A program made the translations under genes and the position numbers. A DNA stretch of 64,000 nt, from IMG/VR virus record IMGVR_UViG_3300023174_000042, positions 124,001 to 188,000 of that record. One strand, written 5' to 3'. Positions 2,160 through 62,738 of this stretch are shown here, piece by piece; the first letter of the stretch is position 1; every line of letters starts with the position of its first letter. A model generated the notes under the pieces. It was not told the DNA's origin and made no database searches. It saw only the letters and a program-made list of their open reading frames with translations.

Positions 2160-2166
2160 TATTTAT
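2160..2166 (+). promoter_or_regulatory. TATTTAT putative late-promoter element upstream of the neck gene
   Basis: The same heptamer lies 4-23 nt upstream of about 20 structural-gene starts in sense orientation. Confidence 0.65.
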
Positions 2167-2179
2167 ATAAAAAACTTTT

Positions 2180-3304
2180 ATGGCAATTATCAACGAACCA
2201 GAAAGAAGTCAATTCTATCAAAAAGTTAGACACTTACTTGGAGCCCCTTTGAGGTCAGTAGAACTAGAAGATGAAATGATGGATACTCTTCTTGAGTATT
2301 CAATAGACGATTATTCACAGTATGTTCAAGATTGGTTAACAGAATCTCAATGGACTTCACTTTATAATTTGAATCTTGACACACAATCTTTATCTAGAGC
2401 CTTTATAACAAAAAGTTTAGATTTTGAAACAAGATACACCTACGCTTATTCTAAAATCGTTGGTTTACAGGCGGGAGGTGATTGGGAAATAAAAAAAGAT
2501 TACGTCCAATTAGTTCCAAACCAACAAATTTATGAAATACCGGCCGGTCGAGAAGTAAATGAAGTTTTGTGGTTTACACCACCAACATTAAATAATTTAT
2601 TATTTGATCCATGGGCATTTGGTGGAATCGCAGGAGGGGGTATTTCAGGACCTGCGGGATATGCACAAATAGGAAATATGTCGGGTAGTTATTTTTTAAT
2701 GCCAGCGTTTGATATGTTATTAAGAATGCAAGAGATTAACATTCAAAAAAGAATTATTGCGGGTGATTTAACATATTATATAACAGCATTACCTGGTGGA
2801 AAAAAAGCATTACACTTGTTAAACACACCGGGAGGAAAATTTGATTTTGGTAATTCATCATTAATGCAAGGAAAAGTTTGGTATTGGTATTATGACACAT
2901 CACAAGGCGATAGAGATAAATGTTTGGCCGACAATCCTGACATCATATTACTTCCTTCTGATGTCCCTTACAACAAAATTAGTTGGTATAAATTAAATAA
3001 TCCAGCACAAGTATGGGTAAGAAGATGGTTCATTGCTTATTGTAAAGAAACATTGTCAAGAGTTCGCGGAAAATTTAGTGGAAATTTAAAGGCACCTGAT
3101 GGTGATTTACAAATGGATTACGCATCCTTATCAACTGAGGCTAAAGATGAAAAAACTAAATTAATTGACGAACTTATTGGTGCGGATGGTAGACTCACAA
3201 GACTTCGTCCTGAAAAAATAATGGAAAGAGAAGCGTTGTTAGCAGAAAATTTAAACAAACAACTTAAGTTTAGAGCAATGCCTCGTCAAATATATGTAAT
3301 TTAG
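2180..3304 (+). CDS. Neck/head-completion protein (T4 gp13-like)
   Basis: N-terminal LLGAPLRSVELEDEMMD and C-terminal W(V)RRW...RGKFSG pattern typical of gp13-like neck proteins. Confidence 0.7.
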   Translation: MAIINEPERSQFYQKVRHLLGAPLRSVELEDEMMDTLLEYSIDDYSQYVQDWLTESQWTSLYNLNLDTQSLSRAFITKSLDFETRYTYAYSKIVGLQAGGDWEIKKDYVQLVPNQQIYEIPAGREVNEVLWFTPPTLNNLLFDPWAFGGIAGGGISGPAGYAQIGNMSGSYFLMPAFDMLLRMQEINIQKRIIAGDLTYYITALPGGKKALHLLNTPGGKFDFGNSSLMQGKVWYWYYDTSQGDRDKCLADNPDIILLPSDVPYNKISWYKLNNPAQVWVRRWFIAYCKETLSRVRGKFSGNLKAPDGDLQMDYASLSTEAKDEKTKLIDELIGADGRLTRLRPEKIMEREALLAENLNKQLKFRAMPRQIYVI

Positions 3305-3307
3305 TAT

Positions 3308-3655
3308 ATGCCAATACATAGAGAATCACCAACAAGAAAAACCGTATTCAGAGGAGGTAGATCAATTAACTTGAATACTTTTGAAACTATAATTTTAAGC
3401 GACCCAACTTATACTACAAACGGTGAAAATTTAATTGTCGTTAAAGATATCCCTAATTGTAAATTAAAACTTAATTCTACAACCACCGATAAGGTAATAA
3501 TAAAGTCTTTAACAAATTGCACAATTATACCAGATCTAAACAGAATTGATGAAGATTGGGATGAAATTGAAATTAGTAAAGGGTCTTGTGTGGAACTACA
3601 AAACATACAAGGAGTCTGGTATATATTATCGTCCGATGGTTTGAAACTTGATTAA
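3308..3655 (+). CDS. Small putative virion protein
   Basis: 115-aa ORF directly after the neck gene; beta-rich C-terminus (GSCVELQNIQGVWYI). Confidence 0.5.
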   Translation: MPIHRESPTRKTVFRGGRSINLNTFETIILSDPTYTTNGENLIVVKDIPNCKLKLNSTTTDKVIIKSLTNCTIIPDLNRIDEDWDEIEISKGSCVELQNIQGVWYILSSDGLKLD

Positions 3656-6445
3656 CTCATCTTTTGGGACATATTTTTTCATGATATCGTCGGCCCCTTT
3701 ATACATGTGATATGGAGTTTCATTAACACGATTCCAAAACAACATTTCTTCGTCTGAAATTTCCATAACGTCTTCTAACTTATCTTGATCACTTTCATCA
3801 AATGGTTGTCCGTTTATTAATTCACATTGTTCTTTTGTAAAAAATGGTCTTTCTTCGGGATTTTTAATTAATAATGAATTTCTGACTTCCTGTTTAAAAA
3901 CAACTAACAAAGGCTCAACTCTTTTATTAAAAGTTGCAATTGCTCTTTGAATGTTATATTGTCCCTTCATAGTTGGGTTGCTTTCAAGATCTAATGGGTC
4001 AATTCTATAACAATTAAGTTGGATTATTGAATCCAAAGAATCAGGAATAGGACCACCATAAGTTTCGATGTGATCATTAGACCAACCTTTTTTTGGTTTG
4101 TTAACTTTTTGAACATCTCCATGTGATGCTTTCGATCCATTATTAACATAAAATATCACATCACCAAGATTTACATTTAACCCTTCTTTTATTGCCAACT
4201 CCATGTGTGCTTGACGAGACATTGAGTTTCCCGCTTTTGTTGTTGTTTTACTTTTGGAAACATAATCTTCTATTGTTTGTTTTACTTTCGCTTTGTTTGC
4301 AATATCCATTAAAGGAATTTCAAGATCAAAAATTTGTTGTATGTATTCATAATACCACTCAACAAACTCTTGTCCTTTACCATCAAGAAGTAATTTAATC
4401 CCTTTATCTAAAAACTTTTCAATATAAATCGGCATTTTTTTAGATTTAATTGAGTTTCCTGTAAGTTTAATTTTTCCTTTGGCGGTAATTAACGCATAAT
4501 TTTTACGAGCCAAGTTAATACAAGCAGGCCACTGTCCATCGGTGTCAAGGGCCATTTCACCACGCATCGCAAGATCATTAAACTCCATAACATCTGCTTC
4601 TTCACCAACATATTCTTTTCCTTCTTTTACTTTCCAGTTTTGTCCTTTGCCAATATAACGTCTTTCTTCCACACCTTCAGGAACCGAAAAGTTAATACCA
4701 TCCGTGTCCATTACAAGAGGGGTATAACCACGATCCATAAAAAAATGAATCATCATTCGAAGATACTGACGACCAGTACATGTAATCATTTCACCCTTAT
4801 CCATATCACCCCAATGAAATACTTGAGGGGCTGACAAAGCTCCAAACATCGAGTTAATAAAAATCTTAATCGGCAATTGTTTTCTATCGTATGATGTTGA
4901 TTTCTTTTTATCGATTGTTGCAAACTCTTCAGCAAGTTGTTTATATTTAATACGAGTATTTCTAAAATATGTTAAAAGACCTTTCATTGCTCCTGTGACA
5001 TCGCAATCTGGAAACACATCATGAACCAACTGAATTGATGGGTATAGAGACGAGTAGTCAAGTTTTAATACGTTCTTTGAGTAACCTGTTCTAATCAACC
5101 TTGAAAGTCCTCCTACGAAGTTTCCTTTATCGTTTTTAGCAGGTATTGCTAGTTTATGTTTATAAGACCATGCTAACATTAACATTTTCCATAAAGTAGC
5201 AGTTCCCATAGTTGATACTCTTTCATAAGTTGTTGGAAGAAGAGATGCTAATAAAAAAGAACCTTGGTTGAATTCTTCATCAACCAAAAGTGTTTCTTCT
5301 AAGTCGTCGTCAAGATAACGCTCAATAATATTGTCCCCCGTTGTTTTAATATAAATTTTAGAATGTCTTTCACAAACCTCATCGATCTTTGGATCAAGAC
5401 CAATTTTTTTATATTTACCATTTTCAACATTTAACCAATATTCTTCTTTTTCACGATACATAGAACCAATTTTATCATGATCAACATAAACACGATCTGA
5501 AGCCTCAAGTTCTAAATACTTTGTAATGTATTTCAAACCGGCCTCTTTGATGTTTGAATTAATTGCTTGAGCCCTTCTAACAGAATGTAAAATATCAATA
5601 ATATTATAACCCCACATTGAGGTTTGTGTAAATTTTTCTACTTCGTTTGCCAATTTCAAAATAGATTCTTTTTGTGAAATTGGTTTTTCTGAATTTAAAG
5701 ACTTTGCAATTTTTCTAATGTCTAAGTTTAGAATTTTACATCTTTCATAAATCCAATACCAGTCAAAGTTAAATGAGTTATATCCTGATATAATTGATGG
5801 GGTTAATTCTTCTATTGTTCTAAAAAATTCTGTAATACCTCTTCTCTCTTCATCTTCGTTTGTGCATTCAATAACTTTTTTAAACCCCTTGTTTGTTTTA
5901 ATTCCAATCATAAATATTCTACCATCTTTAGGTTCTAAAGATGTTGTCTCAAGGTCAAATACCATTCTTGTAATGTCGTTATATTCCTCAAAACCCTTGA
6001 ATAGTCTTTTTTCTTTTGATATGAGGTATTGCTCAACTGGAGGTAAAATCATAATCAAATCTTTTACATTTTCACCCCAAGGATCAACTCCTCCTTCTCT
6101 AAAAAATTGGATAAGGTTTCTATAACCTTTCATAGACTTAACCATAAAAGTAAGTCCTCGTTCTAAACGATCATTATTATCAGTTCTAAGTTTTTCAATA
6201 ATAATTCCGTGTTTCGACATTGCTTCTTTTTGTAAAGCCTTTGATTTGGAATAAAAATTAAGATTTTTTAAATCTCCGACCCACGCAAATGAAACAAGGG
6301 TGTCTTTTTGAAGTTGTTTTCCTTTACCAGGAACTTCTTTTATTTTAAAGATCTTATCTGTTAAGTAGTCGTATTCTACTGCTACTATGTATTGTTCTGG
6401 ATCGTTTCCTTGTAGGAAATTTTCAATTTCTTCTTGTGATATCAT
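3626..6445 (-). CDS. DNA polymerase family B
   Basis: ExoI FDLETT, ExoII GYNSFNFDW, region II LDYSSLYPS, region III KIFINSMFG, region I MDTDG, KNYA. No intein is evident. Confidence 0.95.
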   Translation of the reverse strand: MISQEEIENFLQGNDPEQYIVAVEYDYLTDKIFKIKEVPGKGKQLQKDTLVSFAWVGDLKNLNFYSKSKALQKEAMSKHGIIIEKLRTDNNDRLERGLTFMVKSMKGYRNLIQFFREGGVDPWGENVKDLIMILPPVEQYLISKEKRLFKGFEEYNDITRMVFDLETTSLEPKDGRIFMIGIKTNKGFKKVIECTNEDEERRGITEFFRTIEELTPSIISGYNSFNFDWYWIYERCKILNLDIRKIAKSLNSEKPISQKESILKLANEVEKFTQTSMWGYNIIDILHSVRRAQAINSNIKEAGLKYITKYLELEASDRVYVDHDKIGSMYREKEEYWLNVENGKYKKIGLDPKIDEVCERHSKIYIKTTGDNIIERYLDDDLEETLLVDEEFNQGSFLLASLLPTTYERVSTMGTATLWKMLMLAWSYKHKLAIPAKNDKGNFVGGLSRLIRTGYSKNVLKLDYSSLYPSIQLVHDVFPDCDVTGAMKGLLTYFRNTRIKYKQLAEEFATIDKKKSTSYDRKQLPIKIFINSMFGALSAPQVFHWGDMDKGEMITCTGRQYLRMMIHFFMDRGYTPLVMDTDGINFSVPEGVEERRYIGKGQNWKVKEGKEYVGEEADVMEFNDLAMRGEMALDTDGQWPACINLARKNYALITAKGKIKLTGNSIKSKKMPIYIEKFLDKGIKLLLDGKGQEFVEWYYEYIQQIFDLEIPLMDIANKAKVKQTIEDYVSKSKTTTKAGNSMSRQAHMELAIKEGLNVNLGDVIFYVNNGSKASHGDVQKVNKPKKGWSNDHIETYGGPIPDSLDSIIQLNCYRIDPLDLESNPTMKGQYNIQRAIATFNKRVEPLLVVFKQEVRNSLLIKNPEERPFFTKEQCELINGQPFDESDQDKLEDVMEISDEEMLFWNRVNETPYHMYKGADDIMKKYVPKDELIKFQTIGR

Positions 6446-7703: not shown

Positions 7704-7745
7704 TTAATCTTTTTCTATAAATACAACAAAAGACCATTTAGTGTC

Positions 7746-8786: not shown

Positions 8787-8812
8787 TTAATCTTTATTAA
8801 TAAATACTTGAA

Positions 8813-12965: not shown

Positions 12966-13011
12966 ATAACATAAATACCAAATTAAAATATTTCTAAAAT
13001 CTGTAAATCAA

Positions 13012-14010: not shown

Positions 14011-14064
14011 TGTTGTTTTTTAATAAATACTACATTTATAAATATTTTAATATTATTTTTATTT

Positions 14065-16275
14065 ATGAATAAAATCAAACTTTTATATCTCACACCACAC
14101 CTTTCAACAGGAGGAATGCCACAATTCGTATTAAAAAGAATTGAAACCCTTCAAAAATACAAAGATCAAATTGAAATATTTTTAGTGGAATATTCTAAAT
14201 TTAGTGATGAATATGTTATTCAAAGAAATAAAATAACTAAATTGTTAGATCAAAATCACTTTTTTTCTTTGGGGTTATCAACAGAAGAAGATAAAAAATA
14301 TGATTTAATAAAAATTATTAAAGAAAATAATATTGATATTATTCACGTAGAAGAAATACCAGAAGCTTTTGAAAGTTTTAATAAAATACCAAAAGATTTA
14401 TTAAATCAATTATATTCAAATAACAGAACATGGAAACTTGTAGAAACTTGTCATAATGTTTGGTATGATGCCAATAGATTAAAAAAATTACATCCAGATT
14501 ATTATTGTTTGGTTACGCCTTTCCATCAAGTTTCACAATTTAATAATACACCATCACCAAAAAAATTACTCACTTTTCCTTACGAAGAAAAACAAATTTC
14601 AGTTTATAAAAAAATTGAATCAAGACAAAAATTAAAAATTGATGAATCAAAAATCCACATATTAAATGTTGGTTTATGGACGGAAGGGAAAAATCAAAAA
14701 GAAGGAATTGAAGTTGCAAGATTATTACAAGACACAAATCCTAATTTACATTTTCATTTTGTTGGAAATATGGCACCAAACTTTGAAACTTATTGGAAAC
14801 CAATAATGGAGGACTTACCAAAAAATGTTTCTGTTTGGGGTGAAAGAGATGATGTTGATTTATTTATGGAGTGTTGTGATGTTTTAATGTTTAATTCAAC
14901 TTTTGAATGTAACCCTCTTGTTATTAGAGAAGCAATTGGTTATAAAATGAAAATTTTAACAAGAAACCTTCCACAATATATGGGAATGTTTGACCCATAC
15001 ATTAAACCAATAGAAGGAGATATAATTAAAATTTCAAACGATTTGTTAGATCTAATTAATTCAAACCAAAATTATGAAATTAAAGATCAAACAGATTTTG
15101 GAAACGAGTTATTAAATTTTTATAAAAAAGTTATAAATACACCAATGATTCATAATGAACTGATCAAAAACGACTATACTTTTAATCAACACTTTGTTGT
15201 AAATCCATTTTTTGAAATTATGGGAAAAAGTGATAGTTTATTTAACATAAAGTTATTTGACCAAAATAATTTAATATATGAAAATAATTTGCCAATTAAT
15301 AGTTGGGTTAAATTAAACAGAGAATATTATACAAAATGGAGAACCGAAGTTTATGAAAATGGCGAATTGATTTATAATCACACATTAAATTTAAAAAACA
15401 AAAGAGTTTATATTTCATTTGGGTCAAAATCATTAGGAGACACTTTGGCTTGGATACCATACTGCGAAGAGTTTAGAAAAAAACACGACTGCGATTTAAT
15501 CGTTTCAACTTTTATGAACGATCTTTTCAAGTATCAATATACAAATATTGAATTTGTTGAGCCAGGTGAAACGGTGTATAACATAATTGCCCAATATCAA
15601 CTTGGTTGGTATTACAACGAAAATGGGGAATTTGATTCTAACAAACATCCTTTTGATTTTAAAAGACAACCATTACAAAAAACGGCAACAGATATTTTGG
15701 GATTAGAATATAAAGAGATTAGACCAAAACTTAAATTACCAAATGTTTCAAAAAAGAAAAAAGTGGGCATTGGTTTTCATTCAACAGCACAAGCAAAGTA
15801 TTGGAACAATCCTGATGGGTGGCAGTCCGTTATAGACCATCTTAGTATGTTAGGATATGAATGTATGATCTATTCAAAAGAGGGTGATGGTTACATGAAT
15901 AATTTTTATCCAAAAGGAGTTACTATCTTTAAAGGGGGGAATCTTCAGGAGGTTATTAACGATTTGGTTAGTTGTGAATTTTTCATTGGGTTAGGTTCAG
16001 GTTTATCTTGGTTGGCTTGGGCATGTGAATTACCAGTGATTTTAATTTCAGGATTTAGTGAAAAATTTGCAGAAACAAAGTTAGACACATATAGAGTTAT
16101 AAATGAAAACGTATGTCATGGATGTTTTAATAATGATAGATTAAATGCCGGTGATTGGAATTGGTGTCCACTTCATAAAGGAAGTGATCGTCAATTTGAA
16201 TGTTCAAAACAAATAACATCAGACATGGTTATTAAAGAAATTGAATTTTTATTAAAAAATTTCAACAATCGCTAA
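14065..16275 (+). CDS. GT4-like domain fused to an Aah/TibC-type (autotransporter O-heptosyltransferase family) protein glycosyltransferase
   Basis: N-half: HLSTGGMPQF, NVG....KNQ, ECNPLVIREA. C-half: SLGDTLAW, STAQAKYWNN, FIGLGSGLSWLAW, ISGFS, and the iron-finger CHGC-x13-C-x11-C. Confidence 0.85.
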   Translation: MNKIKLLYLTPHLSTGGMPQFVLKRIETLQKYKDQIEIFLVEYSKFSDEYVIQRNKITKLLDQNHFFSLGLSTEEDKKYDLIKIIKENNIDIIHVEEIPEAFESFNKIPKDLLNQLYSNNRTWKLVETCHNVWYDANRLKKLHPDYYCLVTPFHQVSQFNNTPSPKKLLTFPYEEKQISVYKKIESRQKLKIDESKIHILNVGLWTEGKNQKEGIEVARLLQDTNPNLHFHFVGNMAPNFETYWKPIMEDLPKNVSVWGERDDVDLFMECCDVLMFNSTFECNPLVIREAIGYKMKILTRNLPQYMGMFDPYIKPIEGDIIKISNDLLDLINSNQNYEIKDQTDFGNELLNFYKKVINTPMIHNELIKNDYTFNQHFVVNPFFEIMGKSDSLFNIKLFDQNNLIYENNLPINSWVKLNREYYTKWRTEVYENGELIYNHTLNLKNKRVYISFGSKSLGDTLAWIPYCEEFRKKHDCDLIVSTFMNDLFKYQYTNIEFVEPGETVYNIIAQYQLGWYYNENGEFDSNKHPFDFKRQPLQKTATDILGLEYKEIRPKLKLPNVSKKKKVGIGFHSTAQAKYWNNPDGWQSVIDHLSMLGYECMIYSKEGDGYMNNFYPKGVTIFKGGNLQEVINDLVSCEFFIGLGSGLSWLAWACELPVILISGFSEKFAETKLDTYRVINENVCHGCFNNDRLNAGDWNWCPLHKGSDRQFECSKQITSDMVIKEIEFLLKNFNNR

Positions 16276-18681: not shown

Positions 18682-18771
18682 CTTTTACTATAAATATTTC
18701 TGTTAGTTAAAATAAAATTAAATAACACCTATAAATATGAACTCAAACCTATTTTAATCTATTTATAAAAT

Positions 18772-23505: not shown

Positions 23506-23671
23506 CTTGATTCTAACTATTAGAAACAAGTTGGCTGATACATACAAATAATACCAGGGTGATTTTAAGAGTAAAAACACCCACTGAATATTATACTAAT
23601 TTAAATAGGAAGATAAATAAAAAGATATTAATAATTGTCGCATTATGCGACGATACTATACATATAAATAC
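23506..23671 (-). promoter_or_regulatory. Structured ~200-nt 5' leader of the coiled-coil gene, with a late element and a perfect palindrome
   Basis: TATTTAT at 23664-23670; GTCGCAT-T-ATGCGAC at 23637-23651; hairpins at 23555-23586 and 23506-23530. Confidence 0.5.
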
Positions 23672-23935: not shown

Positions 23936-24002
23936 TTTTTTTTATTTCTTTTTATAAATATGTTTAATTTTTAAGTTATTTAGTTTTTATGTTAATTTTA
24001 TT

Positions 24003-28508: not shown

Positions 28509-28535
28509 ATAAATACCACAAATCAAAGTATTTAT
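28509..28535. promoter_or_regulatory. Back-to-back divergent TATTTAT elements
   Basis: ATAAATA at 28509-28515 serves the minus gene; TATTTAT at 28529-28535 serves the plus gene. Confidence 0.65.
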
Positions 28536-45937: not shown

Positions 45938-46744
45938 ATGAGCAAGAAAAACACAATATCTATTATTTTACCGATTAAATCGGCAAAAGCGATCGGTTTC
46001 GAAGACTTTTTTGATAAATGTATCCAATCAGTCAAAAACCAAAAAGAACATGTAAACGAATTAATCATTGTACATGGAGATGAAGATCTTTTAAAAAATC
46101 ATTTAACATCGTATAATTTTGAAGAGTTAAACGTTGTTTTTAAAACTTGGTCAGAGCAGCCAAATTTTGCTAAACAAGTAAATTATGGTGTTGAAGTTGC
46201 GACTTCTAATTGGTGTTCTATTTTAGAATTTGATGACGAGTATTCAAACATTTGGTTTAAAAACGCATTGAATTATATGGATATTTACAAAGATGTTCAC
46301 GCATTTTTACCTATAGTTGTTGACGTAGATGAGAAATTAGTTTTTGCTGGATTTACAAATGAAGCAACATTTGCCGCAAACATATCATCTGAAATTGGCA
46401 TTTTAACAAACGAAACTTTACAAACATTCCAAAATTTTCAAACATCTGGAATGGTTTTTCAAAAAGAAAAATATCAAGAAGTTGGTGGAATGAAATCAAA
46501 TTTAAAATTGACTTTTGGTTATGAATTGTTTTTACGTCTGACACATAATTCGGCAAAAATTATGACAATTCCTAGAATCGGATATAAACATATGAATTTG
46601 AGAGAAGGATCAATTTTTTGGAATTACAAAAATGGTGAAAACAAAATGAATCAAGATGAAGCAAGATTTTGGATTGAGACCGCGAAAAAAGAATACCTTT
46701 TTACCACTGAAAGAGAAATAAATTATGAACCTCAAGAAATTTGA
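45938..46744 (+). CDS. GT2-like glycosyltransferase
   Basis: ISIILPI, CIQSVKNQ, VNYGV, LEFDDEY, EVGG. Confidence 0.75.
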   Translation: MSKKNTISIILPIKSAKAIGFEDFFDKCIQSVKNQKEHVNELIIVHGDEDLLKNHLTSYNFEELNVVFKTWSEQPNFAKQVNYGVEVATSNWCSILEFDDEYSNIWFKNALNYMDIYKDVHAFLPIVVDVDEKLVFAGFTNEATFAANISSEIGILTNETLQTFQNFQTSGMVFQKEKYQEVGGMKSNLKLTFGYELFLRLTHNSAKIMTIPRIGYKHMNLREGSIFWNYKNGENKMNQDEARFWIETAKKEYLFTTEREINYEPQEI

Positions 46745-47487
46745 TGTCTAGTAGTGAAAATGACATAGTTTTTGAAAAGAAAAAGAAAGGTAGAAAACCA
46801 ACAACTAATAATTATTTTGACGAAAGAGAAGAGACGGCGGTTAAAAATTTTTTAATAGCTGAAACTTACGAAGAAAAAAATAAAATTTACAATGAGTTTT
46901 TAAGAGACCCTTTAGATAAAATGATATCTTCGATCATACGAAGATATAAATTGTACAGGAAAGATATGAATTATGAAGAAATTCACATAGACACACATTC
47001 ATTTCTTATGACTAAAATAGATAAGTTTAAACCATCAAAAGAAAAAAAGGCTTATTCTTATTTTGGAACTATTTGTAAAAATTATCTTATGGGTCAAATA
47101 ATGAAAGACCAAAAAGAAACAAATAGAAAAATATCGTATGAGGACATTTCTTCTGACTTGTGTAACAGAGAAGAAATGTCTTATACCATAGATGAAGATG
47201 TTTTAAGTTCAGAATATATTATAAAAAAATTTTTAGAAAGATTAAAAGAAGATATTGATAATATTGACATAAACGATCAAGAACATAAATTAGGAGCAGC
47301 AATATACGATCTTTTTGAAAACTATGGAACTATATTTCCAGACACTAACAATAATAAATTTAATAAAAATATTATATTATTCGAGTTGAGAGAAATGACT
47401 AATCTTTCTACGAAAGAAATCAGAAACTCGATAAAAAAATATAAAAAATTATATTTTGATTTAATACAAGAATTAGTTAAAAGTTAA
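46744..47487 (+). CDS. T4 gp55-like late-transcription sigma factor
   Basis: Basic N-terminus then NYF; KIDKFKPSKEKKAYSYFGTICKNYL resembles the region 2 of gp55-type sigmas. Confidence 0.6.
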   Translation: MSSSENDIVFEKKKKGRKPTTNNYFDEREETAVKNFLIAETYEEKNKIYNEFLRDPLDKMISSIIRRYKLYRKDMNYEEIHIDTHSFLMTKIDKFKPSKEKKAYSYFGTICKNYLMGQIMKDQKETNRKISYEDISSDLCNREEMSYTIDEDVLSSEYIIKKFLERLKEDIDNIDINDQEHKLGAAIYDLFENYGTIFPDTNNNKFNKNIILFELREMTNLSTKEIRNSIKKYKKLYFDLIQELVKS

Positions 47488-47499
47488 TATTTATATACT

Positions 47500-51573: not shown

Positions 51574-51593
51574 TATTTATTAAGAAAAAATAA

Positions 51594-53063: not shown

Positions 53064-53088
53064 AGAGATATTTATAAAATAAAATATT

Positions 53089-53920: not shown

Positions 53921-53978
53921 AAAAAAAGATTAATATCTTTTTTTTTGTATTTTTATGTTTATCCGTATATTTATTAGT

Positions 53979-55209: not shown

Positions 55210-55239
55210 TTGATTATAATTATAAATATCTTATATTTG
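55209..55239 (+). promoter_or_regulatory. Bacteroidota-type housekeeping promoter TTTG-N19-TATATTTG
   Basis: Exact match to the -33/-7 consensus, upstream of 55244. Confidence 0.5.
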
Positions 55240-56131: not shown

Positions 56132-56185
56132 ATAATATAAATATATTATATTTAACCAAAAAATCAATTGTTTTTTTATTATAAT

Positions 56186-56235: not shown

Positions 56236-58143
56236 TTATCTCAATTCTCTTAAATCGAATGTACGAACTCCATCAACTGTAATTCTGGCATAGAACCTGT
56301 TATTTACCATCTTCTTCGCGTATCTGGTCATAATACCTTTGATTGGCGTGAAGTTGAATGGGTTATACATTGTAGGTGTCAATTGTAGAGGAACATACGG
56401 TGCGTAGATGTAACCTGTGTCTAACAATGAAGTTCCTTTGTGTCCAATCAAAACTTGGTTTGCTGGGAAGTAAGGATCACGATAAACTTGGTAACGTCCA
56501 GACAATGTACCAACTCTTTCAATACCCATGTTGTATTGGTCTTGATCAGGAGCCGCGTTAGATACGTGGAAGTATTCTAAATCGTCAAAGATAGCAGAAA
56601 CCTCAGAAGAAACAACGATCCAGTTAGCACCACCTCTCAAAGTAGATTTGTGGATTTGTGCTGACAATTGGTTAATTGCTGTAATCAAAGTTTGGTTCCA
56701 GTCTTTTTGAGTGTAAGATGTTGTAGATCCAACTCTTCTCCATCCGTTGTAGTCCCAACGTAATTGCCATGCGGCACCTTTACGTAGGTCACGTAAGATC
56801 TCACGGTCAATTTCAGCCGCAACTTGTTCTGACAACAACGCTGTCAATTCAGCTTCAGCATCGATGTTATGGAATGCGGCAACGTCTTGTGCTAATTCAG
56901 GAGACCATTGTGCTCTTAGTTTTCTTTCTGTAACAGATACAGTTACTGACTCAAGGTCAAAAGAAACCTCACCAATTTGATCTTCGAATTCCATTTCAGC
57001 ATATCTTCTATACCAAGCCAAGAATGAACCACCAGAAGTACCTGAATAAATAGTAGTTCCTGTGTAACCATCCAATGATGTTGAGTTACAATCAGCACAT
57101 ACTGGACAAGATAAATCTACTTCAAGGTAGATACAACCGTCTTGTGAGCAAACGTTGTTATAATTACCACCATCACCAATGTTTGTACCGTTAGCACTTC
57201 CGCTATTTCCAAAGACAGTTGCGGTATTAGTACTTGTAGGTGTAACAATTCCTTGTCCGTAAATTTGAGTTACAACTCTAAACAATAGAGGAACAAATAC
57301 AGTTTGATTGTTATAAGTACTTGTAAATACATTACAAGGTGTAGTTGATGCAGAAATAACTGAAGTTCCATAGATTCTTAGATCGGAAAGGAAAGATTCA
57401 GTATCCATTTCGTTACCATCTGGTCCGATAAGTTTTCCTGTACCAGCATTAGCGAAACCACAAAGTTTCATAAGAACTTTTCTTGTGTTTCCAGAATATT
57501 CAGTTAAAGTCGCATCAACTAAACTACTACCAGCCCATTTTTGTACCGTAGTGTTAGCGGTTACTGCAGTCCACTTACCTTTAGAGTAGTCAAACAATCC
57601 TGGAGGATCTAATCCTGCCTCATTTCCTTCGTAGAATAAATCGTAAAGATCTTTTTTGTAAGGATAAGGACCATTTGGTGGATAACCAGCGTTTACATCG
57701 TTTGGTCCGTTTGGAGCTCCATAAGGTGCATAGTGATCACCACCAGCATTTGCAACTCCGGTTGAAGGGTATCCGTTAGCGTCTAATGAAGATGGGTTTT
57801 GATATCCTTGGATTCTTGGTACAAAATAGAACAATTTACCGATAGGTAAATTCATAGCTTGTACAGATACGATGTCGTTAGCCAACAATTTAGAGAATAC
57901 ACGTCTTACGATTGGGAAAACAACTGTTTCAAATGCTCCGTTAGAAGTACCATCTGAAGATGCTTCGTTAATCAAGAAAGATGCTTGGTTCTCATATAAT
58001 TGAGCTACGTTTTCTTTTAGGTGGCCTTTAAGACCTTCAAGGAACCCTAATTTGTCCCATTTGTTAATTGTGTCTTCTTTGATAACTTTAAGGTGTTTTA
58101 ACCCGATGTTACCTACAAGACCTGATTCTAATAATGCTCCCAT
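56236..58143 (-). CDS. Major capsid protein (T4 gp23-like) with a large internal insertion
   Basis: AQLYENQ, PIVRRVF, VSVQAM..P.G, RKLRAQWSPELAQD, AEIDREI, YAPYVPL, GIMTRY. Confidence 0.95.
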   Translation of the reverse strand: MGALLESGLVGNIGLKHLKVIKEDTINKWDKLGFLEGLKGHLKENVAQLYENQASFLINEASSDGTSNGAFETVVFPIVRRVFSKLLANDIVSVQAMNLPIGKLFYFVPRIQGYQNPSSLDANGYPSTGVANAGGDHYAPYGAPNGPNDVNAGYPPNGPYPYKKDLYDLFYEGNEAGLDPPGLFDYSKGKWTAVTANTTVQKWAGSSLVDATLTEYSGNTRKVLMKLCGFANAGTGKLIGPDGNEMDTESFLSDLRIYGTSVISASTTPCNVFTSTYNNQTVFVPLLFRVVTQIYGQGIVTPTSTNTATVFGNSGSANGTNIGDGGNYNNVCSQDGCIYLEVDLSCPVCADCNSTSLDGYTGTTIYSGTSGGSFLAWYRRYAEMEFEDQIGEVSFDLESVTVSVTERKLRAQWSPELAQDVAAFHNIDAEAELTALLSEQVAAEIDREILRDLRKGAAWQLRWDYNGWRRVGSTTSYTQKDWNQTLITAINQLSAQIHKSTLRGGANWIVVSSEVSAIFDDLEYFHVSNAAPDQDQYNMGIERVGTLSGRYQVYRDPYFPANQVLIGHKGTSLLDTGYIYAPYVPLQLTPTMYNPFNFTPIKGIMTRYAKKMVNNRFYARITVDGVRTFDLRELR

Positions 58144-58169: not shown

Positions 58170-59693
58170 TTATTTTATTTTTGTCATCAAATCCTTCATT
58201 CTCAAGAATTGTGGATTTTCATACGTTTTTGATTCAATTAAATTCGCTGATGAACCTGTAGAGACAGTTTTATTCACAGTTCTTTCGATTGATTCGTTTA
58301 TTGAGTTTTCTGTACTTACACCATTTCCTAATTCATTTTTAATGGTTCTGTAAAGATTTTTTGATTCTTTCAAAGATTCAACATTATCAAATCTTTTAAG
58401 AATGTTTATTTTTTCTTGTTTTGTTGTTGAATGTTCAGTAAACAATCTTGTTGAGTAAGCCAAGTTGGAATTAAAAACAGCAACTTCGTTCAATTTTGTT
58501 CTAAACACATCAAGAGCTTTTCTGTATTCTTCATTTTTTTCTCTCAAAGTGTTTATTTCATTTGATTCAGAAAGATTAAATGGATTAAACTCCATGTTTC
58601 TGTTGTTTAATCTTGCTTTTCTAAGACCACGGCTACCATCCTTAGATCCATTACCCAATGTTCTTGAAGCTTCTTTAGTTTCGGCTTTTTTAGTTTGGTG
58701 TTTTTTTCCTTCATAGTCTTTATAGTGACCTTTAACGTCTCCTAATTTTTGACCTTTTGATCTCTTATAATCACCTTTGTTTCCTCCCCACTGTTTTTCT
58801 TCTTTATATTCAAATTTGGCTTTTCCTGTTCCCATCGCTTTAGTACCTTTTCCAAAAGCTTCTTTTCTTTTTTCATCAAAACCTCCATTCATGTTAGGTT
58901 TTTTGTCGTAGTTAAACTTGGGACCTTTTCCAATACCAACACCTTTAGCTTTAATTGCTTTTTTAACTGATTCCATAACTGAGTCATAATCTTCCTCCAT
59001 GTCATCCATTTCCTCCATGTCATCCATTTCCTCCATGTCATCCATGTCATCCATTTCCATCATGTCATCCATTTCCATCATGTCATCCATTTCCATCATG
59101 TTATCGTCTTCATCCATTTCTATTTCATAGACAGTATCTTCTTCAGATTCTTCATCCATTTCTATTTCATAGATTGTTTCACCATCATGATCTTCCATAA
59201 ACTCATCGTCCATTTCCATCATATGGTCTTCTTCTGATTCTCCCAAATGGATCATATACTCATTATCACCATCAGTTAGGTGAATGTTTTCACCTTCTTT
59301 TTTAACAACGATTCCGTCTTGATCTCCCATGGCTTTAAAAACTCTTAAGACTTCCGCGTCAGACGCTCCAGTCATATCAATAGTTTCATCTTCCATGTCT
59401 TCATCTTCCATGTCTTCATCTTCCATGTCTTCATCTTCCATGTCCATGTCTTCATCATCCATTTCCATTTCGTCTTCAGTTCCCATGTCGTCATCTTCTG
59501 GCGTGTTATCAACTTCGACTTCATCGTCTTCAACCTCTTCTTCATCTTGTTCTCTAAGAGATTCTTTTACTAATTGTCTGATTTCTTCACTCATTGTAGA
59601 ATGAAGTATTCCTTTTGCATTTTCTTGTAGAGTTTCTTCCAAATTCTTGATTTGAAAAAGAGCATCTTCTACTACATTTCTGTTATTTGTCAT
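58170..59693 (-). CDS. Prohead core/scaffold protein (gp22-like)
   Basis: Lies between the protease and MCP genes; very acidic D/E/M-rich N-half, basic middle, coiled-coil C-terminus; TATTTAT at 59717-59723. Confidence 0.75.
   Translation of the reverse strand: MTNNRNVVEDALFQIKNLEETLQENAKGILHSTMSEEIRQLVKESLREQDEEEVEDDEVEVDNTPEDDDMGTEDEMEMDDEDMDMEDEDMEDEDMEDEDMEDETIDMTGASDAEVLRVFKAMGDQDGIVVKKEGENIHLTDGDNEYMIHLGESEEDHMMEMDDEFMEDHDGETIYEIEMDEESEEDTVYEIEMDEDDNMMEMDDMMEMDDMMEMDDMDDMEEMDDMEEMDDMEEDYDSVMESVKKAIKAKGVGIGKGPKFNYDKKPNMNGGFDEKRKEAFGKGTKAMGTGKAKFEYKEEKQWGGNKGDYKRSKGQKLGDVKGHYKDYEGKKHQTKKAETKEASRTLGNGSKDGSRGLRKARLNNRNMEFNPFNLSESNEINTLREKNEEYRKALDVFRTKLNEVAVFNSNLAYSTRLFTEHSTTKQEKINILKRFDNVESLKESKNLYRTIKNELGNGVSTENSINESIERTVNKTVSTGSSANLIESKTYENPQFLRMKDLMTKIK
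58992..59100 (-). repeat. Coding 18-bp tandem repeat (MMEMDD/MEEMDD)
   Basis: catccatttc(c/c)atcatgt-type units; a second 15-bp repeat (EDEDM) lies near 59386-59445. Confidence 0.85.
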
Positions 59694-59763
59694 ACTTTTT
59701 ATAAAATATTTTTCTAATAAATATCAATAAAAAAGAAAAAGTTATTGTTTTTTTAAATAAAAC

Positions 59764-59797: not shown

Positions 59798-59826
59798 AAT
59801 TTTTTTTAAGTTAAAAAGTTAATTTT

Positions 59827-60039: not shown

Positions 60040-60045
60040 AATTTG

Positions 60046-60774
60046 TTATTTATTCAAATAATCGGACAATCTATTCATTAAGTCAAGCGATTTAGATCCT
60101 GTTTCACCAATATGTCTTTCTGCGTTAATTCTTTTTTCCTCGTCAAGATTTTCTTCAAAGTTAAATCTTTCTTTTGGATCATTGAAAAGATACGCTCCAG
60201 GTGTTGATGGTGAAGAAACCAAGTCAAAACAAATTAATTCAAAATCATCCTGAACTTCGTTTTGCTCACCAACTTTTTTAAGTGACCCAACTCCACGAGA
60301 TGATATACCTAAAGTAACCCCCTGACGAAGATAGTTTGCGGCTAAATCTCCTTTTGTTGATACAATACCTCTTTCGTGAAAACCTGGGCTTGTAAGTAAT
60401 TTTAATTTACCCAATAATACAGGACCCTCCCACCATATATCAGTAATTGCGTGTGAAACTCTATCTAAATCAATCAAAGATGATTCTGGGTGATTTAATT
60501 CAGAAAGGGCGGTTCCTTTTTGAATCATTTTTTTATAATTTTCGGCCTCCCTTTTTAAAATCTTTTCGGGATATATTCTTCCGTTTCTATTTGGGGTGTT
60601 ATATTTTTGTAATACGGCATAAAACTCAAAAGGTTTTGAGTGATCTAACATATCACGATTCTCTCTTATCATAGATAAGTTTCTTCTTTCATTCGGATCG
60701 ATATAACCCGCATCATACTCAACAAGAATCCCACGACCTGAATCTCTTGGGCCTAGTATTTTTAAATTATCCAT
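60046..60774 (-). CDS. Prohead protease (T4 gp21-like)
   Basis: NRNGRIYP, ELNHP, VSH, GISSRGVGS, FDLVSSPSTPGA; TATTTAT at 60790-60796. Confidence 0.92.
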   Translation of the reverse strand: MDNLKILGPRDSGRGILVEYDAGYIDPNERRNLSMIRENRDMLDHSKPFEFYAVLQKYNTPNRNGRIYPEKILKREAENYKKMIQKGTALSELNHPESSLIDLDRVSHAITDIWWEGPVLLGKLKLLTSPGFHERGIVSTKGDLAANYLRQGVTLGISSRGVGSLKKVGEQNEVQDDFELICFDLVSSPSTPGAYLFNDPKERFNFEENLDEEKRINAERHIGETGSKSLDLMNRLSDYLNK

Positions 60775-60796
60775 TTAATATTTTTCTTTATAAATA

Positions 60797-61264: not shown

Positions 61265-61301
61265 AGATTTTTTTCATATGCGAAATGTTTATTTTTGTAT
61301 A

Positions 61302-61330
61302 ATTCTAATAAATTATTATATTTATATCAA
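61302..61330 (-). promoter_or_regulatory. Early/middle promoter TTGATA-N17-TAGAAT, overlapping the opposite-strand late element of bS21
   Basis: Hexamers at 61325-61330 and 61302-61307; + strand TATTTAT at 61319-61325. Confidence 0.5.
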
Positions 61331-61343
61331 CAAACAAAAAAAT

Positions 61344-61532
61344 ATGTTAATTGTAGAAGTAAAAAAAAGTAATATTGAAAAGGCTTTAAAAGATTTAAAA
61401 GGAAAAGTTATTAGAACTAAACAAAATAATATTCTTTTTGAAAGAAAGGAATTTGTCAAACCCTCTGTAATAAAAAGAGAACAAACTAAAAAAGCGATTT
61501 ATAACCAAAAATCTAAAATCCAAAAAGATTAA
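61344..61532 (+). CDS. rpsU: Ribosomal protein bS21
   Basis: 62 aa: MLIVEVKKSNIEKALKDLKGKV...RKEFVKPSVIKRE..KKAIYNQ. The true start is the internal ATG at 61344. Confidence 0.85.
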   Translation: MLIVEVKKSNIEKALKDLKGKVIRTKQNNILFERKEFVKPSVIKREQTKKAIYNQKSKIQKD

Positions 61533-62245
61533 AGACCTTCGTTTAATTTTTTTATTTTATAATAATTCAGTTCTGAAAATGATTCCTTTTGTAATTTGAC
61601 TAAAACCTCATCAATAGTTTTGATTGTATCTATGTCAGATTGATTTTCTTTTTGTGTAGTAAGTTTAGAAATAACATTTTCCTTTTCGTTATTATAATTT
61701 TCTAACAACGATTGTTTTGGTGTTTTCAAAATAGTTTTAAGTTCTTTTCTTTCAGATTCAGAAAGTGTAGATATGAATTTAGAAATAGTTTTGTTTGCCA
61801 CAGACACCATAGAGTTCAAAGGAACTTTAATAATTTCTTTTTTTTCTTTTTGTGGTTCTTTCAAACTTTCTAAAATTAATTTTTTACTTTTAATTTTATG
61901 TTCTAAAGCCAATACGTTTGTGGAAAATAAATTATCAATGTTTTTGTAAGAATTTTCACATTTGTTATGACCGGCCCAAGCATTTAATTCTTTTAGTTGT
62001 GTTGGTTGAATTTTATTTATCAAATTTTCGTAAGCAATAATTGATTCGTTTACAAACTCAACGGCCATATTTTCTGATAAACCTTTTTTTGTTGATAACT
62101 CATCATACAAGAAAAAAAGTTTAGAAATATTTTTATTTTTTAAAACCAACTCTTCAAAAATAAAAAAATTATCTTTAAATAAATTTTTCTTGTAAGACTC
62201 AGTAAGTTGATTTTCTATTTTTGATTTTATTTCACCAAATTTCAT
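61529..62245 (-). CDS. Hypothetical head-module protein
   Basis: Start at MKFGEIK, after TATTTAT at 62262-62268. Confidence 0.6.
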   Translation of the reverse strand: MKFGEIKSKIENQLTESYKKNLFKDNFFIFEELVLKNKNISKLFFLYDELSTKKGLSENMAVEFVNESIIAYENLINKIQPTQLKELNAWAGHNKCENSYKNIDNLFSTNVLALEHKIKSKKLILESLKEPQKEKKEIIKVPLNSMVSVANKTISKFISTLSESERKELKTILKTPKQSLLENYNNEKENVISKLTTQKENQSDIDTIKTIDEVLVKLQKESFSELNYYKIKKLNEGL

Positions 62246-62268
62246 TTTTTTTGTTTTTTTTATAAATA

Positions 62269-62727
62269 TCAACTTATTTTATTTATTTCATCTATTTCCG
62301 TTTCACTAGTTTCTTCATCATATTCGTCTCGGTCAATCATCTCACCATTCCACCAATCATATCCACCAAACCAAGAAGTATAATCTTCAACACCTTCTAT
62401 GTCATCAAAGTAGCTTTCATATGTATTTTTCCAATACTCTATAACTTGAATACTTGCATATCTTTTTGTTACAATTTCATATTCGTGTAACTCAGGTATG
62501 TTAATTTCTTCAGTTAAATAATTTGGGTTATCTCTATAGAGCGCAAAAACAAACTCAATATCTTTATTATTAATATTCATTCCAATATCATTAAAAATGT
62601 CCCTTACGATTTTTTGATTTGAGCTGGATATTAATTGTCTTCCATCACCAAATTGTTCAATACCTTCATTCATTCTTTTTAGAATAAACTTTAAATTTTT
62701 TTGTGGTAGTTTTTCTAATTTACTCAT
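62269..62727 (-). CDS. Hypothetical protein
   Basis: 152 aa with an acidic C-terminus; TATTTAT at 62732-62738. Confidence 0.6.
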   Translation of the reverse strand: MSKLEKLPQKNLKFILKRMNEGIEQFGDGRQLISSSNQKIVRDIFNDIGMNINNKDIEFVFALYRDNPNYLTEEINIPELHEYEIVTKRYASIQVIEYWKNTYESYFDDIEGVEDYTSWFGGYDWWNGEMIDRDEYDEETSETEIDEINKIS

Positions 62728-62738
62728 GTTAATAAATA

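What the first reader, a model, noticed from the sequence alone, without database searches (positions are those of the whole stretch)
2160..62738. Window-wide late element TATTTAT: the reverse complement of the T4 late promoter
Seen: sense-strand TATTTAT 4-23 nt before the starts at 2180, 7703, 8786, 12965, 14010, 18681, 18772, 23935, 28497, 28551, 47500, 51594, 53089, 53979, 55209, 56131, 59693, 60774, 61344, 62245 and 62727. It is absent before polB and the glycosyltransferase operon starts. Known: T4 gp55 reads TATAAATA in sense orientation. Inference: the gp55-like sigma at 46744 has a different specificity. Spacings of 4-5 nt imply leaderless or nearly leaderless late mRNAs. The motif also corrects several ORF starts.
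Basis: partly seen in the sequence, partly recalled or inferred. Interest (0 to 1): 0.65.

Follow-up and report, generated by a model that had tools for sequence, protein, structure and literature searches.

The report
Late promoter of freshwater jumbo phage
A strictly conserved seven-base word, TATTTAT, sits just upstream of about a third of the genes (mainly virion genes) of this 273-kb T4-like phage of freshwater Bacteroidota. It is most likely the phage's late promoter: a two-base variant of T4's TATAAATA, probably read by a distant gp55-like sigma factor, and often so close to the ATG that the mRNAs would have almost no leader.

Summary
All 21 listed sites exist. Genome-wide (272,576 bp, window = 124001-188000), TATTTAT is the top 7-mer upstream of ORFs: about 100 genes carry it in sense orientation within 45 nt of the ATG, and 31% of all genomic copies lie there against a median of 6% for other A/T-only 7-mers. 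No one-mismatch variant is enriched and there is no -35 element.

The word is invariant at orthologous sites in 80 relatives, and recurs in two more distant complete genomes and in Microcystis phage Mel-JY01. It marks tail, fibre, portal, protease, terminase and bS21 genes. Replication and nucleotide genes lack it; many of them have Bacteroidota-type host promoters instead (TTTG...TAnnTTTG).

ORF 46744-47487 is a distant gp55-family sigma: reciprocal profile hits, and fold Z 10.9 to gp55. It carries an extra sigma-4-like domain. No gp33 or gp45 was detected, and a second, canonical sigma lies elsewhere in the genome.

Calling the word the "reverse complement of T4" is literally true. It is better described as TATAAATA with the two central A changed to T.

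Spacing to the ATG is bimodal (4-5 nt and 13-20 nt). The first class suggests leaderless mRNAs. No RNA evidence could be obtained.

This is a new variant of a known kind.

The parts
2160..2166 (+). TATTTAT, 13 nt before the ATG at 2180 (weak head-tail adaptor match); a second copy lies at 2141-2147
7717..7723 (-). TATTTAT, 13 nt before the ATG at 7703
8800..8806 (-). TATTTAT, 13 nt before the ATG at 8786
12971..12977 (-). TATTTAT, 5 nt before the ATG at 12965 (class 1, near-leaderless)
14023..14044 (-). two TATTTAT copies, 12 and 27 nt before the ATG at 14010 (virion structural protein match)
18690..18696 (-). TATTTAT, 8 nt before the ATG at 18681 (collagen-repeat/CBM5_12 protein, likely a fibre)
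18760..18766 (+). TATTTAT, 5 nt before the ATG at 18772 (class 1)
23954..23960 (-). TATTTAT, 18 nt before the ATG at 23935 (DUF5659)
28509..28535 (.). back-to-back pair: the - strand copy at 28509-28515 lies 11 nt before the ATG at 28497; the + strand copy at 28529-28535 lies 15 nt before the ATG at 28551
46744..47487 (+). distant gp55-family sigma factor (247 aa from the ATG at 46744): sigma-region-2 domain at about residues 24-143, plus a sigma-4-like C-terminal domain at about 157-247
47488..47494 (+). TATTTAT, 5 nt before the ATG at 47500 (class 1); word and spacing are kept in most of the 39 distinct orthologous upstream regions found in 80 related contigs
51574..51580 (+). TATTTAT, 13 nt before the ATG at 51594; invariant in every orthologous upstream region listed from the 80 relatives, while the spacer varies
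53069..53075 (+). TATTTAT, 13 nt before the ATG at 53089
53968..53974 (+). TATTTAT, 4 nt before the ATG at 53979 (endonuclease VII-like; this start fits the family match, which begins at residue 9 of the longer ORF)
55222..55228 (-). TATTTAT, 12 nt before the ATG at 55209
56137..56143 (-). TATTTAT, 5 nt before the ATG at 56131 (class 1; corrects the TTG start at 56167)
59717..59723 (-). TATTTAT, 23 nt before the ATG at 59693; this unit runs on into the gp23-like major capsid gene 56236-58143, which has no copy of its own
60790..60796 (-). TATTTAT, 15 nt before the ATG at 60774 (gp21-like prohead protease, Peptidase_S77)
61319..61325 (+). TATTTAT, 18 nt before the ATG at 61344
61344..61532 (+). 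ribosomal protein bS21 gene (62 aa), on the strand opposite to the surrounding head genes
   Evidence: PF01165, 33.7 bits, cut-off 27; PMC9723584
62262..62268 (-). TATTTAT, 16 nt before the ATG at 62245 (corrects the TTG start at 62272)
62732..62738 (-). TATTTAT, 4 nt before the ATG at 62727, directly after the gp20-like portal gene (class 1)

Best explanation
TATTTAT, in extended form (A/G)TATTTAT(A/T), is the -10-like core of the late, virion-gene promoters of this phage. The phage is a T4-like jumbo phage of freshwater Bacteroidota and belongs to the bS21-encoding clade of Chen et al. 2022.

It works like the T4 late promoter. It is one short A/T element with no -35 partner, read on the non-template strand by a phage sigma factor bound to host core RNA polymerase. 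The most likely reader is the product of ORF 46744-47487, a distant gp55 relative.

Compared with T4's TATAAATA, the element keeps positions 1-3 and 6-8 and has TT instead of AA at the two central positions.

Transcription would start a few bases downstream. In one class of about 26 genes the ATG lies exactly 4-5 nt after the word, so the mRNA would start at or next to the A of the ATG (leaderless). In the other class the ATG lies 13-20 nt after it, giving a leader of roughly 7-14 nt, and no Shine-Dalgarno sequence was evident in the upstream regions read. That suits a Bacteroidota host.

What is shown: the word, its strand, its position, its conservation, its gene set and the sigma's family. 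What is inferred: which sigma reads it, the timing, and the start sites.
For: Statistics and strand bias.

Anatomy:
- The 7-mer is strict; no one-mismatch variant is enriched (<=0.058 against 0.313).
- No -35 or other upstream conservation is seen.
- The bases at +4 to +7 after the word are A-rich.

Conservation:
- The word is invariant before the orthologues of 47500 and 51594 in 80 IMG/VR relatives, while the flanks drift.
- The same word and the same bimodal spacing recur in two complete genomes whose capsid protein is about 72% identical (G001, G002).
- Microcystis phage Mel-JY01 has ATATTTAT 19 times in sense against 2 in antisense, mostly 28-44 nt before the ATG of structural genes. GGAG lies between word and ATG in most of the upstream regions read, so there the word cannot be a ribosome signal.

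Gene set:
- The 96 genes with the word match tape measure, five tail-fibre families, sheath, portal, head protease, large terminase and virion proteins.
- The 125 genes without it match DNA polymerases, helicases, RNR, thymidylate synthases, dUTPase, methylases and glycosyltransferases.

A separate early class matches the Bacteroidota sigma-A pattern, TTTG-N19-22-TAnnTTTG.

Sigma:
- phrog_234 (late sigma) has its only hit in the genome in this ORF (E 8.7e-4).
- The family profile has its only hit in T4 in gene 55 (E 6.6e-4).
- 19 of 72 family members match phrog_234.
- hhalign against gp55 gives E 1e-4.
- The AF2 model has pLDDT 91.5. gp55 (7d7c_F) is the best low-rmsd structural match: Z 10.9, 3.4 A, 115 residues.
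- Mel-JY01 has this sigma family and the word but no canonical Sigma70_r2 gene.

Leaderless class:
- The spacing peaks sharply at 4-5 nt: 26 genes, against 0-2 genes at each of 1-3 and 6 nt.
- The base before the ATG is T in 23 of 26, against 49% elsewhere (p 6e-5), and in 8 of 9 in both G001 and G002. This pyrimidine -1 / purine +1 pattern is typical of start sites.

Literature: bS21 and the structural genes of this clade are co-transcribed in lake metatranscriptomes (PMC9723584), and here bS21 has its own TATTTAT.
Against: - There is no transcript evidence.
- The sigma-to-gp55 links are individually weak (E 1e-3 to 1e-4; hhalign probability 57%), and other sigma region-2 structures score within 1-2 Z units.
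- The ORF has a sigma-4-like C-terminal domain that gp55 lacks. Even so, no -35 element is seen.
- gp33 and gp45 homologues were not detected.
- A few non-structural genes carry the word: a DnaB-like helicase, an ATP-dependent protease and homing/HNH endonucleases.
- With T4 geometry (+1 seven bases after the seventh base of the word), the start in class 1 would fall on the T or G of the ATG. So either the start is 1-2 nt closer than in T4, or some of these ATGs are not the true start codons.
- About half of the orthologues at ~40% identity lack an exact copy within 60 nt.
Confidence: 0.7

Rival explanations
1. TATTTAT is a promoter, but it is read by a different factor: the canonical sigma-70-type protein encoded at G000:48930-49730, or host sigma-A redirected by a phage protein.
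For: A second sigma with regions 1.2, 2 and 4 exists (phrog_351 E 1e-54; Pfam r2 and r4). Its gene lies just downstream of a host-type early promoter. Relatives G001, G002 and G005 carry 1-3 such sigmas. ATATTT is shared between the late word and the host -7 box TATATTTG.
Against: A sigma with region 4 usually needs a -35 element, and none is conserved. Mel-JY01 uses the same word, has no canonical Sigma70_r2 gene, and does have the gp55-like family. The G of TAnnTTTG is replaced by A, and the variant TATTTGT is not enriched in the late geometry. The word matches T4's gp55 element at 6 of 8 positions.
Confidence: 0.15
2. The word acts at the RNA or translation level, as a ribosome-recruiting, bS21-linked or processing signal for mRNAs without a Shine-Dalgarno sequence, and not as a promoter.
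For: It lies very close to start codons (4-23 nt). No Shine-Dalgarno sequence was evident in the upstream regions read. The phage encodes bS21.
Against: In Mel-JY01 the same word mostly lies 28-44 nt upstream, with a GGAG between it and the ATG in most of the regions read. The spacing is bimodal, not fixed. Genes inside operons, such as the capsid gene, lack it. It resembles a known -10-like element, and class 1 shows a pyrimidine -1 / purine +1 signature.
Confidence: 0.05
3. The sites are ordinary T4-type TATAAATA promoters on the opposite strand, driving antisense or divergent transcription.
For: About half of the sites read TATTTATA, so the other strand carries a perfect TATAAATA.
Against: The word flips with the strand of the gene just downstream: 99 sense against 35 antisense in co-directional spacers. 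Read the other way, it would point into the 3' end of the preceding gene. T4 shows the opposite bias under the same pipeline. The eighth base is A in only 50% of sites.
Confidence: 0.03
4. Chance: an AT-rich word in AT-rich spacers.
For: The genome is 30% G+C, and two thirds of the window's copies are background inside ORFs.
Against: It is a 6-sd outlier among all A/T-only 7-mers. It exceeds shuffles restricted to intergenic DNA by 17 sd. It is conserved at orthologous sites.
Confidence: 0.01

Closest known systems
Bacteriophage T4 late promoters (TATAAATA at -13 to -6, read by gp55, activated by gp33 and the gp45 clamp)
   Same: A single short A/T-rich -10-like element with no -35. It lies upstream of virion genes. 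It is identical at 6 of 8 positions, including the A-12 and A-8 that gp55 buries in deep pockets. The phage is T4-like (gp23, gp20 and gp21 homologues) and encodes a distant gp55 relative.
   Different: The central AA (-10, -9) is TT. The eighth base is only weakly conserved. The distance to the ATG is 4-5 or 13-20 nt, against 13-34 nt in T4. The sigma is 247 aa and has a sigma-4-like C-terminal domain. No gp33 or gp45 homologue was detected. In the weak alignment to gp55, the residues at the shallow A-9 pocket differ (H95 aligns with Y105, N13 with E28), while the stacking Tyr (Y97 with Y107) is kept.
Bacteroidota housekeeping promoters (-33 TTTG / -7 TAnnTTTG, sigma-A)
   Same: They are present in the same genome before the replication and early-type genes (TTTG-N19-22-TAT(A/C)TTTGTA). 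They share the ATATTT stretch with the late word.
   Different: The late word has A where the -7 box has its conserved G, has no -33 element, and marks a different gene set.
bS21-encoding freshwater Bacteroidetes jumbo phages (Chen et al. 2022, PMC9723584)
   Same: Same habitat (lake metatranscriptomes), same size range, and the same head-gene block with bS21 on the opposite strand. bS21 is co-expressed with the structural genes.
   Different: That paper's main text never uses the words promoter, motif or sigma. The shared TATTTAT before bS21 and the head genes offers a mechanism for the co-expression it reports.
Microcystis phage Mel-JY01 (PP395634), the closest isolate found
   Same: ATATTTAT lies upstream of structural genes. 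It has a sigma of the same family (E 1e-29), a capsid protein 43% identical, and a bS21 gene in the head block.
   Different: Its leaders are long (mostly 28-44 nt), with GGAG ribosome sites in most of the regions read. Its consensus extends downstream (ATATTTATRTATG). Its host is a cyanobacterium.

Membership tests
T4-type late promoter | Consensus TATAAATA on the non-template strand | tested here: not met
   The word is TATTTAT(A/T), matching 6 of 8 positions. TATAAAT itself is depleted in sense orientation (28 sense against 58 antisense).
T4-type late promoter | No conserved -35 or other upstream element | tested here: met
   In the position table of 100 sites, information content is <0.32 bits at every position from -30 to -1.
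T4-type late promoter | Precedes late (virion) genes and not early or replication genes | tested here: met
   PHROG scans of 96 genes with the word against 125 without it. A few exceptions: helicase, protease, endonucleases. Timing itself was not measured.
T4-type late promoter | Transcription starts about 6-7 nt downstream of the element | not testable with these tools
The only indirect signs are an A-rich stretch at +4 to +7 and T at -1 before the ATG in class 1.
T4 late transcription machinery | gp55 homologue encoded | tested here: met
   Reciprocal single hits between phrog_234 and the ORF and between the family profile and T4 gene 55. Fold match Z 10.9 to 7d7c_F. All of these are weak or distant.
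T4 late transcription machinery | gp33 co-activator encoded | tested here: inconclusive
   phrog_254 has no hit at E<=10. The protein is short and fast-evolving, so absence is not shown. The sigma's own sigma-4-like domain might take its place at the flap; this is inference.
T4 late transcription machinery | gp45 sliding clamp encoded | tested here: inconclusive
   PF02916 and phrog_223 have no hit. A gp44-like clamp loader is present (E 4e-11), so a diverged clamp is likely.
gp55 protein family | Sigma region-2 fold followed by a helix-loop-helix and a C-terminal clamp-binding tail, with no region 4 | tested here: not met
   The region-2 fold is met. The C-terminal 90 residues form a helical domain whose best matches include many region-4 domains at Z 5-5.8. 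No clamp-binding tail was identified.
Bacteroidota sigma-A promoter | -7 box TAnnTTTG with a -33 TTTG about 19-22 nt upstream | tested here: not met
   The late word has A at the G position and no -33. The true host-type class is separate.
Leaderless mRNA | Transcript 5' end at the A of the start codon | not testable with these tools
   Only geometry is available: 26 genes with exactly 4-5 nt between word and ATG, and T at -1 in 23 of 26.

The most novel reading that the evidence does not exclude
The late mRNAs of this abundant clade are leaderless or carry ultra-short leaders by design. On this reading, the phage bS21, made from the same TATTTAT promoter class, retunes the Bacteroidota ribosome, which does not use Shine-Dalgarno pairing, to favour those mRNAs. 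The promoter, the start-codon spacing and the ribosomal protein would then form one late-expression system. In addition, the sigma would be a gp55 relative that has kept, or regained, a region-4-like domain and so needs no gp33.
Probability: 0.15. Interest if true: 0.8.

Novelty: new variant of a known kind. Interest (0 to 1): 0.55.

Why it matters
Sequence relatives of this phage's sigma are very numerous in public metagenomes: more than 7,800 proteins scored E<=0.001 among 8,000 candidates. The paper that describes the clade does not discuss its gene regulation.

A strict seven-base late promoter would be useful in several ways:
- It is a simple tool to split the genes of these 270-360 kb genomes into late and non-late sets.
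- It helps fix start codons and find small genes; it found bS21 here.
- It explains why bS21 is expressed together with the head genes.

For transcription biology, this is a natural specificity variant of the gp55/TATAAATA system. It differs at the two central bases, one of which (-9) gp55 reads through a shallow pocket. That makes the rules of -10-like recognition by minimal sigmas testable by swapping residues and bases.

The 4-5 nt class, if confirmed, would be a large set of leaderless phage mRNAs in a host phylum that does not use Shine-Dalgarno pairing.

Tried and rejected
RNA evidence:
- The look-up of sequencing runs found only freshwater and lake runs kept as assembled contigs, holding 5-8% of the sampled words.
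No read or transcript evidence exists in this report.
A local script built its query set automatically from all genes with the word. Nothing in this report rests on that row.

Searches that found nothing:
- Megablast of 20 kb of the window against the phage collection: no match.
- Direct Pfam, PHROG, PDB-sequence and T4-gp55 searches with the sigma ORF: no hit. Only profiles and the predicted structure linked it to gp55.
- phrog_12791: no hit.
- The search for related loci with the whole sigma alignment failed because it has no conserved stretch. A search with the distant member P0241 found nothing.
- Contigs encoding P0122 and P0131 were too short to use.
- The 20-kb flanks around distant sigma genes held too few late genes to be informative, so whole genomes were fetched instead.
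- A bS21 search in bacterial genomes found nothing. A local tblastn of bS21 against G001, G002 and Mel-JY01 found nothing either, although Mel-JY01 has an annotated S21.
- Literature searches for TATTTAT or ATATTTAT as a phage late promoter, and for Mel-JY01, found nothing relevant.

Weak results:
- Foldseek on the full sigma model gave only weak E-values, because the two domains sit differently, although every top hit was a sigma factor.
- The orthologue test of the leaderless class at ~40% identity was underpowered, because few class-1 genes have orthologues.

Rejected explanations: chance, an opposite-strand T4 promoter, and a host -7 box variant (see the rival explanations).


Full report
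WHAT THE WINDOW IS. The window is bases 124001-188000 of a 272,576-bp IMG/VR virus record with 30% G+C, estimated 93% complete. It is a T4-like phage. It has a gp23-type major capsid gene (56236-58143, -), a gp20-type portal (62739-63983, -), a gp21-type prohead protease (60046-60774, -) and a family-B DNA polymerase (3626-6445, -). The nearest records in the phage collection are an unannotated 484-kb 'huge phage' (LR756508) and Microcystis phage Mel-JY01, each about 43% identical in the capsid protein. Relatives are very common in lake metagenomes and metatranscriptomes. The head-gene block carries a ribosomal protein bS21 gene on the opposite strand (61344-61532, +; Pfam 33.7 bits). That is the arrangement described for the freshwater, Bacteroidetes-infecting bS21 jumbo phages of Chen et al. 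2022 (PMC9723584).

All 21 sites are there, at 4-23 nt before the stated starts. In the window, 22 of the 68 copies lie in sense orientation within 45 nt of 20 of the 65 genes. The rest are mostly inside ORFs and look like background.

The whole genome gives the statistics their power:
- TATTTAT is the commonest 7-mer in the 40 nt upstream of 298 crude ORFs, 91 in sense against 28 in antisense.
- In spacers between co-directional genes there are 99 sense copies against 21 +/- 4.5 in shuffles of those same AT-rich spacers.
- Among all 128 A/T-only 7-mers it ranks first for the share of its copies that sit sense-upstream: 31% against a median of 6%. Only its own one-base shifts come close.

The same script run on T4 returns TATAAAT/ATAAATA as the top word, with the opposite strand bias for TATTTAT. 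So the method finds a known late promoter, and the orientation difference is real.

ANATOMY. The core is strict. No single-mismatch variant is enriched upstream. Flanks are weak: A or G before the word, A or T after it, then an A-rich stretch 4-7 nt downstream. Nothing is conserved between -30 and -1, so there is no -35 element.

Spacing to the ATG is bimodal. There is a sharp peak at 4-5 nt (26 genes) and a broad one at 13-20 nt. The same two peaks, at 4 and at 14-15 nt, appear in two complete genomes of more distant relatives (G001, 288 kb; G002, 360 kb).

In the 4-5 nt class the base just before the ATG is T in 23 of 26 genes, against 49% in other genes (p 6e-5). It is T in 8 of 9 in each relative. 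A pyrimidine at -1 and a purine at +1 is the usual signature of a transcription start, which here would be the A of the ATG.

CONSERVATION. In 80 related contigs, whose sigma is 70-93% identical, the word is unchanged before the orthologues of 51594 and nearly always before those of 47500. The 5-nt spacing is kept, while the spacer and downstream bases vary.

In Mel-JY01, ATATTTAT occurs 19 times in sense and 2 in antisense upstream of genes. In the structural block it mostly lies 28-44 nt from the ATG, with GGAG ribosome sites in between in most of the regions read. That placement argues for a promoter and against a translation signal.

WHICH GENES. PHROG scans were run on the two gene sets:
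- The 96 genes with the word match tape measure, five tail-fibre families, sheath, tail proteins, portal, head protease, large terminase and virion structural proteins. The exceptions are a DnaB-like helicase, an ATP-dependent protease and homing/HNH endonucleases.
- The 125 genes without it match DNA polymerases, helicases, ribonucleotide reductase, thymidylate synthases, dUTPase, methyltransferases, PhoH, RNA ligase and glycosyltransferases. The capsid gene is also in this set; it sits inside a unit whose first gene carries the word.

Many genes of the second set are preceded by a different, longer motif, TTTG/TTG-N19-22-TAT(A/C)TTTGTA. This matches the known Bacteroidota sigma-A promoter (-33 TTTG, -7 TAnnTTTG; from my own knowledge of that literature). 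It agrees with the host prediction in PMC9723584 and with the upstream regions read, in which no Shine-Dalgarno sequence was evident.

So the genome has at least two promoter classes, and TATTTAT is the virion-gene class. 'Late' is an inference from the gene set and from the reported co-expression of bS21 with structural genes. It was not measured here.

THE SIGMA. ORF 46741-47487 probably starts at the ATG at 46744. It has no direct Pfam, PHROG or PDB sequence hit, and T4 gp55 alone does not find it. Profiles do link the two:
- The PHROG for the T4 late sigma has its only hit in the genome inside this ORF (E 8.7e-4).
- An exhaustive search gave 1,124 clusters of relatives. A profile of 72 of them hits sigma-A region 2 (E 0.003) and gp55 (E 0.075) in the PDB. 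In the T4 genome it hits only gene 55 (E 6.6e-4).
- 19 of the 72 members match the late-sigma PHROG.
- hhalign against gp55 gives E 1e-4, with probability 57%.

The AlphaFold model is confident (pLDDT 91.5). Every top structural match is a sigma factor. The best low-rmsd match is gp55 in the T4 late open complex (7d7c_F: Z 10.9, 3.4 A, 115 residues, model residues 24-143), although other region-2 domains score within 1-2 Z units.

Unlike gp55, the protein has a further helical domain at about residues 157-247. Folded alone, that domain finds many sigma region-4 domains among its best matches, but only weakly (Z 5-5.8).

Homologues of gp33 and gp45 were not found. A gp44-like clamp loader was.

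A second, canonical sigma with regions 1.2, 2 and 4 is encoded at G000:48930-49730. Mel-JY01 has the gp55-like family and the word but no canonical sigma region-2 gene.

HOW THE WORD RELATES TO T4. TATTTATA is the reverse complement of TATAAATA only because the T4 element is almost a palindrome. Read in the same direction, the two agree at positions 1-3 and 6-8 and differ at 4-5.

In the T4 structure, gp55 flips out and buries three non-template bases. A-12 stacks on Y97. A-8 sits in a deep pocket with T99. A-9 sits in a shallow pocket lined by N13 and H95 (PMC7892883). With T4 numbering, the present word keeps A-12 and A-8 and changes -10 and -9.

In the weak alignment to gp55, the stacking tyrosine is conserved (Y107), while the residues aligned with H95 and N13 are Y105 and E28. 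This makes a tidy hypothesis for the altered specificity, but it rests on a low-confidence alignment.

LEADERLESS CLASS. This class is supported by the 4-5 nt peak, by its recurrence in the relatives, and by the T at -1. One caveat applies. Strict T4 geometry would put +1 on the T or G of the ATG, so the start must be 1-2 nt closer to the element than in T4, or some of these ATGs are not the true starts. Only 5'-end data can settle this.

START CORRECTIONS. The ATGs at 28497, 53979, 56131 and 62245 sit at promoter-like spacing. They replace longer TTG or ATG calls. For 53979, the endonuclease family match begins at exactly that residue. The start at 61344 defines the bS21 gene.

LIMITS. There is no RNA evidence. 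Gene calls are crude: the longest ATG ORFs. The functional split rests on PHROG family names. Every link between the sigma and gp55 is distant.

VERDICT. This is a real, conserved, strand-specific promoter-like element of the virion genes. It works like the T4 late promoter but is not the same word. It is probably read by a divergent gp55-family sigma that has a different C-terminal half. The phage clade is already described; its promoter and sigma, as far as the searchable literature shows, are not. It is a new variant of a known kind, of moderate interest. The possible link between leaderless late mRNAs and the phage bS21 raises that interest.

Noticed in passing
window 61344-61532 (+): A 62-aa ribosomal protein bS21 gene lies on the strand opposite to the surrounding head genes. 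It is hidden inside a longer TTG/ATG ORF call (61218/61278-61532). A TATTTAT lies 18 nt upstream. The arrangement matches the bS21 jumbo phages of PMC9723584.
   Followed up: yes
G000:C1 9028, 21693, 31840, 48900, 50309, 199405, 201355, 205070, 205224, 210442, 213053, 214382, 218167, 232753, 268697 (all outside the window): A second promoter class, TTTG/TTG-N19-22-TAT(A/C)TTTGTA(G/A)AA, lies mostly 13-23 nt before non-virion genes. It matches the Bacteroidota sigma-A pattern (-33 TTTG / -7 TAnnTTTG) and so points to a Bacteroidota host.
   Followed up: partly
G000:C1:48930-49730 (-), outside the window (L097:8930-9730): A second phage-encoded sigma factor of the canonical type (Pfam regions 1.2, 2 and 4; phrog_351 E 1e-54) lies just downstream of a host-type early promoter. 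Its target promoters are unknown. Relatives G001, G002 and G005 carry 1-3 such genes.
   Followed up: partly
window 7-2151 (+): A 714-aa protein has a complete Fe/Mn superoxide dismutase domain (residues 165-353) embedded in otherwise unmatched sequence. A TATTTAT lies 4 nt before its ATG, just outside the window.
   Followed up: no
window 16252-18681 (-): An 809-aa protein has long collagen triple-helix repeats and a CBM5/12 carbohydrate-binding module. It is probably a fibre, and a late-type site lies 8 nt upstream.
   Followed up: no
window 28509-28535 and 14023-14066: Late words occur back to back on opposite strands, 13 nt apart at 28509-28535. They serve divergent genes. At 14038-14045 the - strand TATTTATA makes a perfect T4-type TATAAATA on the + strand, 22 nt before the glycosyltransferase gene at 14065.
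   Followed up: partly
window 23613-23619 and 23664-23670 (-): Two - strand TATTTAT copies lie in the 232-nt spacer between 23466 and 23699, with no ORF of 20 aa or more downstream of them on that strand. They may be a small RNA, a long leader for 20599-23466, or background.
   Followed up: partly
L094 (LR756508.1 151976-193520) and W03:C1:100327-100974: The 484-kb huge phage carries a sigma of the same family (E 2e-37). Its head-gene region shows no TATTTAT enrichment. Words like TTTTAA(A/C) and ACTTAA are enriched 15-25 nt before its ATGs, which hints that the promoter word varies within this sigma family.
   Followed up: no
L093 (Mel-JY01 5044-46615): In Mel-JY01 the late word extends downstream to ATATTTAT(R)TATG. 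That ATG is not a start codon; it is followed at once by a stop in at least one case. It may mark the start-site region.
   Followed up: no
   Followed up: no
genes with the word, genome-wide (A2): Homing/HNH endonucleases, an ATP-dependent protease (E 1e-236) and a DnaB-like helicase also carry the late word, so the class is not purely structural.
   Followed up: no
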